From the sequence record KJ019095.1: 64,000 bases of DNA. One strand, given 5' to 3'. The notes below the pieces were generated by a model that did no database searches, was not told the origin of the DNA, and was given only the letters and a program-made list of their open reading frames with translations. This document shows positions 2,298 through 29,149 of the stretch, piece after piece; position 1 is the stretch's first letter, and each line of letters starts with the position of its first letter. Position numbers and translations under genes: made by a program.

Positions 2298-3304
2298 TGG
2301 ATTTCTTAAAGGATATTGTAAATGAAATTGGTGGCGACTTCACTCAGATTGCCTCAGAGATTGAAGAAAACGAAACATACGTGGACACTGGTTCGTTCAT
2401 CTTTAATGCTCTTGTATCTGGGTCTATCTATGGTGGTGTATCTGGTAACAAGATTACTGCAATTGCTGGGGAAAGTTCTACTGGAAAGACTTTCTTCTCA
2501 CTCGCCGTGGTCAAGAACTTCTTGGATACTAATCCCGATGCATATTGCCTTTATTTTGATACTGAAGCTGCAATCAATAGAAACCTTCTTGAGTCACGAG
2601 GTATTGACCTTAAGCGGTTGGTTGTCGTCAATGTCGTTACAGTAGAAGAGTTTAGGATGAAGGCACTTAAGTGTGTCGATATCTACCAGAAGAAACCAGA
2701 AGACGAACGCAAACCTTGTATGTTTGTCCTAGATTCTCTGGGTATGTTGTCTACAGAGAAAGAGATCAATGATGCTCTGAATGACAAGAACGTTCGTGAT
2801 ATGACTAAATCACAACTCATCAAGGGGGCGTTCAGGATGTTGACCTTGAAACTAGGTCAGGCTAAGATACCAATGATTGTTACTAACCATACCTATGATG
2901 TGATTGGTGCCTATGTTCCTACTAAGGAAATGGGTGGTGGTTCAGGTCTTAAGTATGCCGCCTCTACTATTATTCACCTCACTAAGAAGAAAGAGAAAGA
3001 CGGTAAGGATGTTATTGGTAACATTATCAAGTGTAAGACAGCTAAGTCCAGACTCTCCAAAGAGAATACAGATGTAGGTGTTAGACTATTCTATGATGAA
3101 CGGGGTTTGGATAAGTACTATGGTCTCCTAGAACTTGGTGAGCTTGGTGGTATGTGGAAGAACGTAGCTGGTCGTTATGACTTGGGTGATGGTAAGAAGA
3201 TCTACGCTAAAGAGATACTAAAGGATCCAGAGAAGTACTTCACCGAAGAAGTTATGGAGAAACTAGATGTTGTTGCTAGGGGAACATTCTCATATGGGTC
3301 ATAA
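2297..3304 (+). CDS. uvsX: UvsX RecA-like recombinase
   Basis: Walker A GESSTGKT, YFDTE, DSLG, GGGSGLKYAAS. Confidence 0.96.
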   Translation: MDFLKDIVNEIGGDFTQIASEIEENETYVDTGSFIFNALVSGSIYGGVSGNKITAIAGESSTGKTFFSLAVVKNFLDTNPDAYCLYFDTEAAINRNLLESRGIDLKRLVVVNVVTVEEFRMKALKCVDIYQKKPEDERKPCMFVLDSLGMLSTEKEINDALNDKNVRDMTKSQLIKGAFRMLTLKLGQAKIPMIVTNHTYDVIGAYVPTKEMGGGSGLKYAASTIIHLTKKKEKDGKDVIGNIIKCKTAKSRLSKENTDVGVRLFYDERGLDKYYGLLELGELGGMWKNVAGRYDLGDGKKIYAKEILKDPEKYFTEEVMEKLDVVARGTFSYGS

Positions 3305-3309
3305 ACAAT

Positions 3310-3840
3310 ATGAGTGAGTATATCAAACACTATAGGGGAGTTCTAACAGATACATCTTGTGATGTTCTGATAGATGCTCTTCTGAGTGTAGATAGAAAGC
3401 ATATAAAGGAACATCGAACAGATCGTAAAACATTTGATCAGGTGTTTCTTAATGCTGCAAATATGGATCTGATTCCAGGTATTACTAAAATAGTTGGTAA
3501 TGTAATCAAACAATACAAGATGGATGTTCCATACTTCACACAGTTCTTTCCCAAGGGACTGGAGATTGAAACACCAAAGGTCAAAGGTTACAGTCCTGGG
3601 GGACAATTCAAACCACATTGTGATGTAGATGCTACTTCCTGTCCAAGGTATCTTGCCTTTCTATTTTATCTTAATGATAATTTTACAGGTGGACAAACAG
3701 AGTTCTTACCTGGTATAATGGTGGAACCTGTGAAAGGTTCAGTGGTGGTATTTCCACCCAACTGGCAACACCCTCATTGTGGATTACCAGTGGAGACTGG
3801 TAACAAATATATTATGTCAACTTATCTAAGATACGTTTAA
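3310..3840 (+). CDS. 2OG-Fe(II) oxygenase (prolyl-4-hydroxylase-like)
   Basis: HCD...FYLNDNFTGGQTEF...HCG...KY facial triad pattern. Confidence 0.9.
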   Translation: MSEYIKHYRGVLTDTSCDVLIDALLSVDRKHIKEHRTDRKTFDQVFLNAANMDLIPGITKIVGNVIKQYKMDVPYFTQFFPKGLEIETPKVKGYSPGGQFKPHCDVDATSCPRYLAFLFYLNDNFTGGQTEFLPGIMVEPVKGSVVVFPPNWQHPHCGLPVETGNKYIMSTYLRYV

Positions 3841-26591: not shown

Positions 26592-26807
26592 ATGTCGAGT
26601 GAACCATTTCTTGAATGGATGGTGAAGCCGCCCATTTCAGATGAAGAGTTGATGTTGATTTGCCTAAAGAATGCCCCGTGTGGTACGAATAGGAAGCAAG
26701 CAATGAAATTGATCAGAGTATTGGAAGTAAAGTTGGCGGAACCTACGGGATTTGCTAATATATTTCCACAACCCAAACCAGGTGGGGAGTCTGATTATGC
26801 TGGGTAA
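26592..26807 (+). CDS. hypothetical protein
   Basis: ORF track; AGGAGG SD. Confidence 0.75.
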   Translation: MSSEPFLEWMVKPPISDEELMLICLKNAPCGTNRKQAMKLIRVLEVKLAEPTGFANIFPQPKPGGESDYAG

Positions 26808-26925
26808 TGTTTTACTTTGGATATCAATTCCCTTTGTAGTTTCTACCATATTCTTTGGTATCTACAGAGGTGAAAATTATTATTATGAGAGTAGTGACTA
26901 TGATGGAAATGGAACATCGCATTAA
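26797..26925 (+). CDS. ndhP: NdhP-like NDH-1L small subunit (42 aa)
   Basis: MLGNVLLWISIPFVVSTIFFGIYRGENYYYESSDYDGNGTSH: one TM helix plus FFG...Y..GNGxxH tail as in cyanobacterial NdhP (recalled). Confidence 0.8.
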   Translation: MLGNVLLWISIPFVVSTIFFGIYRGENYYYESSDYDGNGTSH

Positions 26926-27118
26926 GATGCGTTACGAATTCGCTATGAGTTCGTTCGCTAGAATGTACGGAGTGAGAGCTGTTTCTGGATCAGGGCACCA
27001 TGTCAAATTCTGCAAAAGGTGGGCAGATACTAGTGTTGAGGAAGCTCCTAATGGAACTCTAACTGAAGTTGATTTCTACTTCAGGGATTTGTGGGACATT
27101 TGGGGGGAGTATATATAA
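26900..27118 (+). CDS. conserved cyanophage hypothetical protein
   Basis: ORF track; start moved to ATG 26900. Confidence 0.7.
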   Translation: MMEMEHRIKMRYEFAMSSFARMYGVRAVSGSGHHVKFCKRWADTSVEEAPNGTLTEVDFYFRDLWDIWGEYI

Positions 27119-27201
27119 TGAGAACATATATTCCAGCGTTTTTCATACTAACCTTTGTGATAGTATTTGTTACTTGGGGATTGAATAACGCCTACCCATA
27201 A
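27118..27201 (+). CDS. 27-aa TM peptide resembling the NdhQ C-terminal helix
   Basis: MRTYIPAFFILTFVIVFVTWGLNNAYP; GGGGAG SD; coupled to the upstream stop. Confidence 0.6.
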   Translation: MRTYIPAFFILTFVIVFVTWGLNNAYP

Positions 27202-27209
27202 AATTACAT

Positions 27210-27353
27210 ATGATTGCTTCGTATAAGAAACTCGAAACGGAAAACTTCATGTTACGTTTGGAAGTCGAGAGACTACGAATGGCACTACAAGAGACCCAAA
27301 ACGAGTGGTCACACCCAGAGTCTTGTGTTAGAAAACAAAGTCTCTGGAAATAG
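27210..27353 (+). CDS. 47-aa hypothetical coiled-coil peptide
   Basis: Manual translation; ends just before the terminator. Confidence 0.6.
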   Translation: MIASYKKLETENFMLRLEVERLRMALQETQNEWSHPESCVRKQSLWK

Positions 27354-27357
27354 GTTA

Positions 27358-27395
27358 GGGGGGTGGTTGCCACCTCCCTTTTTTTGTGCTATAAT
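27358..27395 (+). terminator. intrinsic terminator overlapping a sigma70 promoter
   Basis: GGG..GGTGG/CCACCTCCC stem plus T7; TTGCCA-17 bp-TATAAT embedded. Confidence 0.75.
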
Positions 27396-27462: not shown

Positions 27463-27597
27463 ATGGCATACAGAGTTTGGCATTCACCAATAAAGAGTAT
27501 TATCCTACAAACCTATGAGGAGGTAGTTGTATACTATGCAATGCAAAGAGCAGCACATAACACTACTCCAGAAGGTTGGGAAGAAGTTGCTGCATAG
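27463..27597 (+). CDS. 44-aa hypothetical protein
   Basis: Manual translation; GAGGAG upstream. Confidence 0.5.
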   Translation: MAYRVWHSPIKSIILQTYEEVVVYYAMQRAAHNTTPEGWEEVAA

Positions 27598-27620: not shown

Positions 27621-28061
27621 GTGAAAGAAGTAAATTATGAGAACCCATGGATATATCTGGAGAGACCTTTCACTGATGATGATATTCTGGACTACTTTGG
27701 TTTTGTTTATCGTATTACCAATAAGACAACAGGGAGGAAGTACCTGGGAAGAAAGGTATTTTGGTTCCACAGAAAGCCTCCTGGTAAGAAACGAAGGGTA
27801 AAGAAACCATCAGACTGGAAGAAGTACTATGGATCCAGTGATGAACTTAAAGCAGATATTCAACTCTTAGGGAAAGATATCTTCACCAGGGAGATTATAT
27901 CATTGCATAAGACCCTAGGAAAGACAAACTTTGCAGAGACAGAAGCACTCTTCCAATACAAAGTATTGACAGAGAAACTTGACGATGGGTCTCCAATGTA
28001 TTATAATGCGAATATACTTTCGAGATACTACAGGAAAGACTACTTTGATTATGAGGACTAA
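27621..28061 (+). CDS. GIY-YIG endonuclease (T4 EndoII/denA-like)
   Basis: GFVYRITN...KYLGRK...YYGSS...E...YYN. Confidence 0.85.
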   Translation: MKEVNYENPWIYLERPFTDDDILDYFGFVYRITNKTTGRKYLGRKVFWFHRKPPGKKRRVKKPSDWKKYYGSSDELKADIQLLGKDIFTREIISLHKTLGKTNFAETEALFQYKVLTEKLDDGSPMYYNANILSRYYRKDYFDYED

Positions 28062-29149
28062 TGAGTTATTTTACTGATCGTTTTGGTGATACCTATAAGG
28101 TTATCCGTAACTATATCTCTAGTGAAGAAGCAAATACTTTAGGAGAGAACTATAAAGAGTTTGTATCTACTGATGGGGTGCCTACAGAGGCAACCATGAT
28201 TACTTCGAATGCATATGATTTCTACAACAGACCTGAACAGGTAGCACTACTATCAGAGAAAGTATCACATATTAATGAACTATTGGGTAAGAAAGTTCTT
28301 CCTGCCTATTCCTTTGTTAGACAATACGGAGTTGGATCCTTTCTAGGCAAACATACGGACAGAAAGTCCTGTGAGGTATCTCTGAGTATCCACCTGTGTG
28401 GTGATAAGGAATGGCCGTTCTGTATAGAGGATAAGGAAGGAAACCCCGTAGAACTCATCCTACACCCCGGAGATGCAGTCTTATATGATGCACCTAATGC
28501 AACTCACTGGAGAGAAGAATATGATGGTGAGTTCTATATTCAAACCTTTCATCACTATGTAACTTTAGGTGGTGAGTATGAGAATCTATTCTTTGATAAT
28601 AATGATAAAGAATTCTCACTAACCAATTATATTAAACAATATAAGGAATCAGTACCTCCTGATATCTGTGATATGATTGTTAAATACGCAGAACAATTCC
28701 CCAATAGGTGGGAAAATGCTACTACTATACAATCTATAAAAGATAATACTACTGATACTAGGATATGTGAGAGTTGGAATGTTTTACCAACTGATAGTAT
28801 TGATGATGTTGTTTATAAGTATATAACTGAAGCATCTTCTAAGTTCTGTAATACCTTCCCACACTTTAATCTTACTCAGGACACTGGATATCAGATTTTA
28901 AGATACAAACCAGGTGGTAAGTATGACTACCATACAGATCAACATGCCACTTATAACAGGGAAGTTACTATTATTCTAAACCTTAATGATGACTACGAAG
29001 GTGGTAACCTATGTCACATTAAAGACAACCATATGATAAAGATGGGTAAGGGTGATATCATTATTTTCCCTGCTAACTTTATGTACCCACATCGTATTAC
29101 TCCCATAACATCTGGTGTTAGGTATTCTATTGTGACTTGGGCAGTCTAA
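28061..29149 (+). CDS. tandem two-domain 2OG-Fe(II) oxygenase
   Basis: Domain 1 KHTDRKSCE...HWR; domain 2 YHTD...YEGG...HRI...RYS. Confidence 0.88.
   Translation: MSYFTDRFGDTYKVIRNYISSEEANTLGENYKEFVSTDGVPTEATMITSNAYDFYNRPEQVALLSEKVSHINELLGKKVLPAYSFVRQYGVGSFLGKHTDRKSCEVSLSIHLCGDKEWPFCIEDKEGNPVELILHPGDAVLYDAPNATHWREEYDGEFYIQTFHHYVTLGGEYENLFFDNNDKEFSLTNYIKQYKESVPPDICDMIVKYAEQFPNRWENATTIQSIKDNTTDTRICESWNVLPTDSIDDVVYKYITEASSKFCNTFPHFNLTQDTGYQILRYKPGGKYDYHTDQHATYNREVTIILNLNDDYEGGNLCHIKDNHMIKMGKGDIIIFPANFMYPHRITPITSGVRYSIVTWAV

What the first reader, a model, noticed from the sequence alone, without database searches (positions are those of the whole stretch)
27118..27201. 27-aa peptide resembling NdhQ, 190 bp from the NdhP-like gene
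IPAFFILTFVIVFVTWGLNNAYP aligns without gaps to the recalled NdhQ C-terminal helix ISAVLILGFIAGLIWWALHTAYA (I-x-A-x-x-I-L-x-F...W-[AG]-L-x-x-A-Y). It has an SD and is translationally coupled, but it lacks NdhQ's N-terminal arm. Both NDH-1L-specific micro-subunits in one operon would suggest a phage module for remodelling cyclic electron transport; I do not know of a described phage ndhQ.
Basis: partly seen in the sequence, partly recalled or inferred. Interest (0 to 1): 0.75.

Follow-up and report, generated by a model that had tools for sequence, protein, structure and literature searches.

The report
Cyanophage-encoded minimal NdhQ-like micro-protein
A 27-codon gene that nobody has annotated in this marine cyanophage is a real, conserved gene copied from the host's NdhQ, a tiny membrane subunit that holds the photosynthetic NDH-1L complex together, so together with the neighbouring phage ndhP it probably lets the virus keep the host's cyclic electron flow running during infection.

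Summary
The window is Synechococcus phage ACG-2014f. The 27-aa ORF at 27118-27201 (+) exists exactly as described. Its ATG overlaps the stop of the upstream gene, and it is unannotated in GenBank.

- **It is a real gene family.** It belongs to a large cyanophage micro-protein family of 27-35 aa (one TM helix followed by WGLxNAYP). There are at least 130 IMG/VR contigs, synonymous codon changes and ATG/GTG start swaps. No PHROG covers it.
- **It is homologous to NdhQ.**
  - hhalign against canonical NdhQ gives probability 95-96%, with a score about 11 sd above column shuffles.
  - NdhQ chains are the top three of 177,635 PDB sequences (E 0.014).
  - NdhQ HMMs built only from cellular sequences pick this ORF as the best of 2,431 window fragments.
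- **The closest relatives are host genes.** These are unannotated ~39-aa NdhQ-like ORFs that I found between thiE and ribF in Prochlorococcus-like and marine-Synechococcus-like contigs. They share up to 48% identity without gaps and end in WGLxNAYP.
- **It is linked to ndhP.** The phage gene sits in variable order with phage ndhP and an unknown helical protein (phrog_593).
- **It lacks the NdhQ N-terminal arm.** The marine hosts have already largely lost that arm.
- **Function is inferred.** A role as an NDH-1L stabiliser has not been tested. I found no description of a phage ndhQ in the searchable literature.

The parts
27118..27201 (+). NdhQ-like micro-ORF of 27 aa. It has a short basic N-terminus (MRT), one TM helix (about residues 5-21) and a C-terminal WGLNNAYP motif.
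   Evidence: ORF. Family conservation. NdhQ homology. Hydropathy. Unannotated in KJ019095.1.
27102..27109 (+). Shine-Dalgarno-like GGGGGGAG, 8 nt before the ATG and inside the end of the upstream gene.
   Evidence: Read directly from the sequence. It is conserved in the close relatives L009-L014, but those bases also encode the upstream protein.
26797..26925 (+). Phage ndhP (42 aa, single TM, C-terminal YDGNGTSH).
   Evidence: Best PDB match is NdhP 6khi_P, E 0.016. phrog_2173, E 2.6e-29. Annotated only as a hypothetical protein.
26900..27118 (+). phrog_593 protein (72 aa from the ATG at 26900), the constant neighbour of phage Q and ndhP. Function unknown.
   Evidence: phrog_593, E 6e-29. Found on the same strand in 76 of 119 Q-bearing contigs. 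AF2 model is all-helical with pLDDT 86.7 and has no PDB fold match.
26592..26807 (+). 71-aa gene (phrog_1542) that overlaps the ndhP start. It is the first gene of the tightly packed cluster.
27210..27353 (+). 47-aa coiled-coil ORF (phrog_2352), 8 nt after the Q stop and the last gene before the terminator. Unannotated in this record.
   Evidence: phrog_2352, E 1.7e-8. An S-RIM2 homologue is annotated. Not annotated in KJ019095.1.
27357..27389 (+). Intrinsic-terminator-like hairpin (10-bp stem, 7 GC pairs) plus a T-run. It closes the transcription unit and overlaps a strong sigma-70-like promoter (27367-27395) for the next unit.

Best explanation
The ORF encodes a minimal, phage-borne homologue of NdhQ, the single-helix micro-subunit that, with NdhP, clamps the NdhD1/NdhF1 module onto the NDH-1M core of cyanobacterial NDH-1L.

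**Shown here**
- It is a genuine gene family under purifying selection.
- It is homologous to NdhQ, and closest to the ~39-aa NdhQ-like genes of marine picocyanobacteria. It was most likely captured from one of those genes as a copy starting at the host's internal Met.
- It is genomically linked to phage ndhP and to phrog_593.

**Inferred**
- It is co-transcribed and translationally coupled with ndhP and phrog_593, behind nrdA/nrdB.
- The peptide inserts N-in into the thylakoid membrane and occupies the NdhQ site on NdhD1, next to NdhF1 and its beta-carotene.
- With phage NdhP on the opposite face, it keeps NDH-1L assembled while host protein synthesis declines. This would sustain cyclic electron flow and ATP supply for phage replication, on the same logic as phage psbA, hli and ndhP.
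For: **Coding**
- Nine distinct relatives lie downstream of phrog_593 homologues, with an invariant W..N.Y and a conservatively varying helix.
- The WGLNNAYP codons differ synonymously between relatives. The start codon switches ATG to GTG at the same position.
- pN/pS is 0.3-0.6 at pS up to 0.7.

**Homology**
- hhalign of phage set A2 against canonical NdhQ: probability 94.7%, E 6e-8, score 33.0. Column shuffles give 8.8 +/- 2.2, maximum 19.1.
- A6 (79 phage sequences) against canonical NdhQ: probability 96.3%, E 1.8e-9.
- A2 against picocyanobacterial NdhQ found independently with the canonical HMM: probability 96.4%, E 1.3e-9.
- A PDB-wide hmmsearch with A6 gives NdhQ chains as the top three, E 0.014-0.094. 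The next, unrelated hit is at 1.3.
- The phage HMM ranks the NdhQ ORF above every unrelated fragment in 86 of 87 host loci, best E 4e-5.
- Host-only HMMs pick fragment 27073-27201 as the best of 2,431 window fragments. The marine-host HMM gives E 6.9e-5 (next 0.13). The canonical HMM gives 0.0032 (next 0.84).
- Negative control: phage Q against phage NdhP gives probability 0.5%.
- Gapless identity is 13/27 to the Prochlorococcus-like type and 11/27 to the marine-Synechococcus-like type.

**Linkage**
-.
- One contig has Q overlapping the start of a PTOX gene.

**Functional model**
- Loss of NdhQ or NdhP disassembles about half of NDH-1L into NDH-1M, and the double mutant loses nearly all of it (PMC11794437).
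- NdhP and NdhQ sandwich NdhD from opposite sides and contact NdhF, lipids and carotenoids (PMC6992706 and PMC7021789).
Against: - No evidence of translation or of binding was obtainable.
- The single window peptide alone matches nothing. The case rests on family profiles of a short hydrophobic segment.
- The invariant N-terminal NRGIMKF(E/D)GAD arm of canonical NdhQ is absent, and its structural role could not be evaluated here.
- The large phage set (A6) and the marine-host set were both collected with patterns that enforce WGLx(N/H)AYP. The A6-versus-marine-host score (probability 98.4%) is therefore inflated, and only the independent comparisons should be weighed.
- Most Q-bearing contigs (76 of 119) show no ndhP within the fetched stretch.
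- That the host NdhQ-like ORF is a true NDH-1L subunit is itself only inferred, from homology and synteny.
Confidence: 0.62

Rival explanations
1. NdhQ-derived antagonist or remodeller. The arm-less peptide competes with the host NdhQ for the NdhD1 site. It would then weaken or alter NDH-1L, for example by shifting it towards NDH-1M or changing which NdhD/NdhF module is used, rather than stabilising it.
For: - The homology is the same as for the main model.
- The phage version lacks even the short acidic N-terminal segment (ENGGSES) kept by the marine hosts.
- Phages that carry Q do not always carry ndhP nearby.
Against: - Q is paired with ndhP, a known stabiliser, in the window and in many contigs.
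- The other cyanophage photosynthesis genes reported in the papers read here (psbA, hli, petE, petF, ndhP and others) are copies of host components, and those authors interpret them as supporting host photosynthesis (PMC12801897).
- The TM helix and C-terminal motif, the parts embedded at the interface, are the conserved parts.
Confidence: 0.15
2. An unrelated small phage membrane peptide whose helix and WGLxNAYP tail resemble NdhQ by convergence. It might be a membrane anchor or partner of phrog_593, or a lysis or exclusion accessory.
For: - It is very short and hydrophobic.
- It often lies among other tiny membrane ORFs in hypervariable cyanomyovirus regions.
- phrog_593 is a more constant neighbour (76 of 119 contigs) than ndhP (43 of 119).
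- No curated library has a model for it.
Against: - Identity is 41-53% without gaps to host NdhQ-like proteins, including an 8-residue C-terminal motif.
- NdhQ is the top hit among all PDB chains, which include the other small photosynthetic subunits.
- Shuffles and the NdhP control score far lower.
- The host counterpart sits at a conserved chromosomal locus.
Confidence: 0.12
3. A chance ORF that is not translated, with conservation reflecting overlap with the upstream gene or a regulatory element.
For: - It is unannotated in every GenBank record checked.
- It is only 27 codons long.
- tblastn finds it only in ACG-2014f isolates.
Against: - Only 1 nt overlaps the upstream gene.
- More than 100 divergent versions keep the reading frame, the length, the start position and the amino-acid motif while the DNA and the gene order change.
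- No Rfam match in the region.
Confidence: 0.03

Closest known systems
NdhQ of cyanobacterial NDH-1L (T. elongatus PDB 6L7O/6KHI/6HUM chain Q; Synechocystis 6803 NdhQ)
   Same: - Single-pass micro-protein.
- The helix and C-terminus align without gaps (S-A-x-x-I-L/F-G/T-S-I-x-x-L/F-I/V-x-W-A/G-L-x-x-A-Y).
- Best PDB match of the phage family.
- Encoded beside the partner subunit gene ndhP in the phage.
   Different: - 27-30 aa instead of 45-46.
- The invariant N-terminal arm NRGIMKF(E/D)GAD is missing.
- The C-terminus ends in AYP, as in picocyanobacteria.
- Virus-encoded.
- Association with NDH-1L is untested.
Unannotated NdhQ-like ORF of picocyanobacteria between thiE and ribF (Cyanobium, Vulcanococcus, Ca. 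Synechococcus spongiarum, marine-Synechococcus-like and Prochlorococcus-like contigs)
   Same: - Same WGLx(N/H)AYP tail and G-x-I-G helix core.
- 11-16 identities over 27-30 residues.
- The phage Met1 aligns with the host's internal Met.
- This is the probable donor lineage.
   Different: - The host protein is about 39 aa, with an acidic N-terminal M-E-N-x-x-S-E-x-x segment.
- It is chromosomal, in a fixed synteny.
- It is not reported in the 2025 survey of NDH-1 subunits, whose table leaves NdhQ blank for WH5701, WH8102 and CCMP1375.
Cyanophage ndhP (known auxiliary metabolic gene; P-TIM68, S-SCSM2R and metagenomes)
   Same: - A phage copy of an NDH-1L-specific single-helix micro-subunit.
- Same operon in the window.
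- Same presumed purpose.
   Different: - A different protein family (hhalign probability 0.5%).
- ndhP is full length relative to the host, whereas Q is shortened.
- ndhP is in PHROGs (phrog_2173), whereas Q is in none.

Membership tests
NdhQ (NDH-1L subunit Q) | Micro-protein of 50 aa or fewer with one transmembrane helix | tested here: met
   27 aa. The best 17-residue window has mean hydropathy 2.27 (IPAFFILTFVIVFVTWG) and the N-terminus is basic. All family members are 27-35 aa and built the same way.
NdhQ (NDH-1L subunit Q) | Sequence match to the NdhQ helix and C-terminal W-[AG]-L-x-x-A-Y segment | tested here: met
   - hhalign probability 94.7-96.3% against 44 canonical NdhQ sequences, with 0 of 400 shuffles near.
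- NdhQ chains are ranks 1-3 in the PDB-wide search.
- The canonical NdhQ HMM ranks this ORF first in the window, E 0.0032.
NdhQ (NDH-1L subunit Q) | Conserved N-terminal arm N-R-G-I-M-K-F-x-G-A-D (invariant in 44 canonical sequences) | tested here: not met
   - Absent from all phage members.
- Also largely absent from Cyanobium and marine picocyanobacterial orthologues, which keep only G-S-[DE]-S/x-P/T.
- Present in Ca. Synechococcus spongiarum, which bridges the two types at the same locus.
- The phage protein is therefore filed as an NdhQ-derived minimal variant, not as a canonical NdhQ.
NdhQ (NDH-1L subunit Q) | Physical subunit of NDH-1L, bound to NdhD1/NdhF1 | not testable with these tools
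   No multimer prediction is available. The single-chain predictor needs at least 30 aa. No proteomic data are held.
NdhQ (NDH-1L subunit Q) | Needed for the stability of NDH-1L relative to NDH-1M | not testable with these tools
   Known for Synechocystis NdhQ (PMC11794437). Testing the phage peptide needs a complementation experiment.
Picocyanobacterial NdhQ-like subfamily (thiE-ribF locus) | C-terminal W-G-L-x-[NH]-A-Y-P, preceded by an L-G-G-I-G/A-x-F helix core | tested here: met
   - The window peptide ends in WGLNNAYP. It shares 11/27 residues with the marine-Synechococcus-like type and 13/27 with the Prochlorococcus-like type.
- A2 against independently found host sequences gives probability 96.4%.
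- The helix core is only partly kept in the window peptide (LTFVIVF). It is better kept in typical family members (ILGAIGCF).
Picocyanobacterial NdhQ-like subfamily (thiE-ribF locus) | Chromosomal synteny thiE - Q - ribF | tested here: not met
   The phage copies lie with ndhP and phrog_593 instead. This is expected for a captured gene.
Cyanophage auxiliary metabolic genes for photosynthetic electron transport | A phage-encoded homologue of a host photosynthetic or NDH-1 component, conserved across cyanophages | tested here: met
- Three cultured phages: ACG-2014f, S-ShM2 and DSL-LC03.
- Contig GC is 0.29-0.42.

The most novel reading that the evidence does not exclude
Q, ndhP and phrog_593 together form a mobile three-gene phage module that builds a virus-specific form of NDH-1. 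The arm-less Q and phage NdhP would replace the host clamps, and the unknown helical phrog_593 protein would act as a new assembly factor or extra subunit. Infection would then re-tune the complex, for example its coupling to PSI, PTOX or respiration, rather than merely preserve it. A linked possibility is that marine picocyanobacteria have a so-far unrecognised NdhQ that is the target of this takeover.
Probability: 0.18. Interest if true: 0.85.

Novelty: new variant of a known kind. Interest (0 to 1): 0.68.

Why it matters
- **A second NDH-1L clamp in phages.** Cyanophage genes for NDH-1 are reported as few and rare (ndhP, ndhI, ndhD). This adds the second NDH-1L-specific clamp subunit. It is widespread yet invisible to annotation: absent from GenBank records, PHROGs, Pfam and NCBIfam.
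- **A clearer target.** Having both clamps in one operon points to NDH-1L stability, and therefore cyclic electron flow and ATP supply, as a specific target of viral manipulation in the ocean's dominant phototrophs.
- **A cheap experiment.** A 27-aa peptide can be expressed in ndhQ deletion strains that already exist.
- **An unrecognised host gene.** The same analysis uncovers an NdhQ-like gene in Prochlorococcus-like, marine-Synechococcus-like and Cyanobium genomes. A recent survey lists none for its Prochlorococcus and marine or estuarine Synechococcus representatives. This changes the picture of NDH-1L composition in these organisms.
- **A search method.** Motif- and synteny-guided searches can recover micro-protein auxiliary genes that gene callers skip.

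Tried and rejected
- **Curated libraries.** Pfam, NCBIfam and PHROGs scans of the peptide and of the S-ShM2 homologue found nothing. Neither Pfam nor NCBIfam recognises the genuine NdhQ C-terminal 23-mer either, so those negatives say nothing about NdhQ. A weak DUF7248 hit (E 0.063, below threshold) was disregarded.
- **Single-peptide searches.** phmmer of the peptide against the PDB found nothing at E up to 10. tblastn against 50,697 phage records found only the 45 identical ACG-2014f copies, because even 100% identity scores only E 0.04. Prevalence in cultured phages could therefore not be counted that way.
- **DNA homology.** blastn shows that homology with other phages stops inside the upstream gene.
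- **Tool limits.** The search for homologous proteins refuses queries under 40 aa. I reached NdhQ sequences with an X-padded query instead. The structure predictor needs at least 30 aa and has no multimer mode.
- **Genome scan.** The first attempt failed for lack of a conserved stretch. The accepted one returned only the 80 best loci, all of the freshwater or estuarine Cyanobium type. Marine hosts were reached only through a motif scan of metagenomes.
- **False leads.** P0183 and P0187 turned out to be NdhQ of other cyanobacteria in a different synteny.
- **phrog_593.** No Pfam hit, no PDB sequence match (best E 0.73) and no fold match (best E 4.9).
- **RNA reading.** An RNA-element reading of the region was rejected. 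The only Rfam match is a chance lncRNA hit elsewhere.
- **S-RIM8.** The 44-aa ORF upstream of ndhP in S-RIM8 (VWGYNQ...) was considered as a diverged Q and left unassigned.

Full report
**Identity of the window and the observation.** The region is 100% identical to Synechococcus phage ACG-2014f isolate Syn7803US34 (KJ019095.1), a T4-like cyanomyovirus of the family Kyanoviridae.
- The ORF at 27118-27201 (+) reads MRTYIPAFFILTFVIVFVTWGLNNAYP, 27 codons, ATG to TAA.
- Its ATG shares one base with the TAA of the upstream gene (26900-27118). A GGGGGGAG run lies 8 nt upstream.
- The NdhP-like gene (26797-26925) ends 192 nt before it. Its best PDB match is NdhP of Thermosynechococcus (6khi_P, E 0.016).
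- GenBank annotates ndhP only as a hypothetical protein and does not annotate the 27-aa ORF at all.
- The cluster is tightly packed: a 71-aa gene, ndhP, phrog_593, the 27-aa ORF and a 47-aa ORF. It follows nrdA/nrdB on the same strand and ends at a strong terminator-like hairpin at 27357-27379.

**Is it a gene?** The single peptide matches nothing in Pfam, NCBIfam, PHROGs or the PDB. tblastn finds only the 45 identical ACG-2014f copies. Synteny gave the first lead.
- In phage S-ShM2, an unannotated 30-aa ORF overlapping the end of the phrog_593 homologue shares the block VIVxxTWxLxNxY.
- I anchored on phrog_593 in IMG/VR. Thirteen of the 87 loci held at that point (11 of the 80 IMG/VR loci) carry the peptide at the same place.
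- The nine distinct sequences keep W, N and Y invariant. Their helices vary conservatively.
- The WGLNNAYP codons differ synonymously between relatives. Two relatives use GTG instead of ATG at the same start position.
- pN/pS is 0.3-0.6 at pS up to 0.7.
All 120 carry the WGLxNAYP peptide; 118 are 27-41-aa ORFs of the same build (nearly all 27-35 aa) and one is fused to a longer ORF, in contigs of GC 0.29-0.42.
- No PHROG covers the family: 2 marginal hits among 79 members.
- Cultured phage DSL-LC03 also has an unannotated copy.
- Rfam finds nothing relevant.

The ORF is therefore a member of a large, overlooked cyanophage micro-protein family.

**Is it NdhQ-like?** I recovered canonical NdhQ sequences. 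They share an invariant N-terminal NRGIMKF-x-GAD arm and a helix ending in W-A-L-x-x-A-Y.
- Phage set A2 against 44 canonical NdhQ sequences: hhalign probability 94.7%, E 6e-8, score 33.0, over 25 gapless columns.
- 400 column shuffles of the phage alignment gave 8.8 +/- 2.2 (maximum 19.1). 400 shuffles of the NdhQ helix gave 10.3 +/- 2.5 (maximum 21.7). The reversed profile scored 12.8.
- With 79 phage sequences, the probability is 96.3% and E is 1.8e-9.
- In a natural-sequence background of 177,635 distinct PDB sequences, which include the other small photosystem, b6f and NDH subunits, the three NdhQ entries are ranks 1-3 (E 0.014, 0.025, 0.094). The next hit is at 1.3. The smaller, motif-independent set A2 also ranks NdhQ first, though not significantly.
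- Another single-helix micro-protein, phage NdhP, scores probability 0.5% against the phage Q family.

**The host side.**
- An exhaustive HMM search with the canonical profile over 1.84 billion representatives found a divergent branch that ends in WGL(T/S)HAYP and lacks the NRGIMKF arm.
- A genome scan places this branch in Cyanobium, Vulcanococcus and freshwater Synechococcus.
- Ca. Synechococcus spongiarum carries an intermediate form, with the canonical arm plus a WGLANAYP tail, between thiE and ribF.
- The phage HMM ranks this ORF above every unrelated six-frame fragment in 86 of 87 host loci. The best E is 4e-5 among 10,628 fragments.
- Phage A2 against this independently found branch gives probability 96.4% and E 1.3e-9.
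- A motif scan of metagenomes then revealed the same gene in low-GC contigs (0.34-0.45, Prochlorococcus-like, with a conserved GTG start in the lowest-GC group) and in contigs of GC 0.53-0.66 (marine-Synechococcus-like). These contigs show the same DUF1517-thiE / Q / ribF-DUF3611-surE synteny.
- These ~39-aa proteins end in VWGLxNAYP. The window peptide aligns to them without gaps at 11/27 and 13/27 identities, and its Met1 lies on the host's internal Met. A typical phage member reaches 16/30.
- Reciprocally, an HMM built only from these cellular sequences picks fragment 27073-27201 as the best of 2,431 window fragments (E 6.9e-5, next 0.13). The canonical NdhQ HMM does the same (E 0.0032, next 0.84).

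*Caveat.* The large phage set and the marine-host set were both gathered with patterns that enforce the shared tail. Their mutual score (probability 98.4%) is therefore inflated. The conclusion rests on the comparisons that were independent of that motif.

A 2025 survey of NDH-1 subunits lists no NdhQ for WH5701, WH8102 or Prochlorococcus CCMP1375 (PMC12038448 supplementary table). The host gene therefore appears to be unrecognised as well.

**Genomic linkage.**
- In the phrog_593-anchored sample, all 11 Q-bearing IMG/VR loci also have ndhP, against 40 of 80 overall (Fisher p = 4e-4, not corrected for relatedness).
- Among 119 pattern-derived contigs, 43 have ndhP and 76 have phrog_593 on the same strand.
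- Gene order varies: ndhP-phrog_593-Q (the window), Q-ndhP-phrog_593, or Q-phrog_593.
- In one contig, Q overlaps the start of a PTOX/AOX gene.
- phrog_593 folds confidently as a small helical protein (pLDDT 86.7). It resembles nothing solved.

**Mechanism.**
- *Shown:* a conserved coding gene, homology to NdhQ that is closest to marine picocyanobacterial NdhQ-like genes, and linkage to phage ndhP.
- *From the literature:*
  - NdhP and NdhQ sit on opposite faces of NdhD1.
  - They contact NdhF1, lipids and beta-carotenes.
  - They are specific to NDH-1L.
  - Each is needed to keep about half of NDH-1L from falling apart into NDH-1M, and the double mutant loses nearly all of it.
- *Inferred:* the phage peptide, with its basic N-terminus inside, inserts into the thylakoid membrane and takes the NdhQ position. 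With phage NdhP it maintains NDH-1L, and hence cyclic electron flow and ATP supply, during infection.

I put about 0.9 on homology and about 0.6 on this function.

*Rivals:*
- An arm-less competitor that remodels or weakens NDH-1L (0.15).
- A convergent membrane peptide working with phrog_593 (0.12).
- A non-translated ORF (0.03).

**Comparison and novelty.** Phage ndhP, ndhI and ndhD are described. No paper in the searchable library mentions a phage ndhQ. The protein fails one defining feature of canonical NdhQ, the N-terminal arm, so I file it as an NdhQ-derived minimal variant rather than a canonical member. The marine hosts are already halfway along the same reduction: 45-46 aa canonical, about 39 aa in picocyanobacteria, 27-30 aa in phage.

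**Verdict.** Function remains to be tested.

Noticed in passing
L307:8602-8703 (+), L358, L306 and about 50 other metagenome loci; also L088-L169: Prochlorococcus-like, marine-Synechococcus-like and Cyanobium contigs carry an unannotated ~39-aa NdhQ-like ORF between thiE and ribF. The lowest-GC group uses a GTG start. A 2025 survey lists no NdhQ for its Prochlorococcus and marine or estuarine Synechococcus representatives. Some database copies in Ca. Synechococcus spongiarum are named 'RNA polymerase subunit sigma'.
   Followed up: partly
window 26900-27118 (+): The phrog_593 protein is the most constant neighbour of the phage Q gene (76 of 119 contigs) and of ndhP. Its AF2 model is confident and all-helical (pLDDT 86.7). 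It has no Pfam, PDB sequence or fold match, so its function is unknown.
   Followed up: partly
window 27210-27353 (+): A 47-aa coiled-coil ORF (phrog_2352, E 1.7e-8) lies 8 nt after the Q stop. It is also unannotated in KJ019095.1, although its S-RIM2 homologue is annotated.
   Followed up: partly
window 27621-28061 and 28061-29149 (+): These look like mis-annotations in GenBank. The 'NAD synthetase' is a SegE-like GIY-YIG endonuclease (PF19835, E 3e-52). The 'ferrochelatase' carries a 2OG-Fe(II) oxygenase domain (PF13640, E 4.5e-17). A homing-type endonuclease next to the ndhP-Q cluster might help explain why the module moves around.
   Followed up: partly
L231:2793-2879 and 2876-3373 (+): In one IMG/VR contig the Q micro-ORF overlaps the start of a PTOX/alternative-oxidase gene (PF01786, E 1e-14). 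This is another link to plastoquinone-pool electron transport.
   Followed up: partly
L002:1700-1813, L004:1826-1906, L296:1752-1841 (+): Phages that lack Q at this position have a different tiny TM ORF after phrog_593, ending in F-(T)-D-Q or F-E. It is followed by a conserved MWAVHKYGWEHW membrane protein. Several micro-membrane-protein families seem to share this hypervariable spot.
   Followed up: no
L296:1330-1464 (+) (S-RIM8): A 44-aa TM ORF directly upstream of ndhP ends in ...LAVWGYNQIKNNKNHNP. It may be a diverged relative of Q or may be unrelated. It was left unassigned.
   Followed up: no
window 27367-27395 (+): A near-consensus sigma-70-like promoter (TTGCCA, 17-nt spacer, TG-TATAAT; 11 of 12 matches) overlaps the terminator tail, just upstream of the 44-aa gene at 27463.
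   Followed up: no
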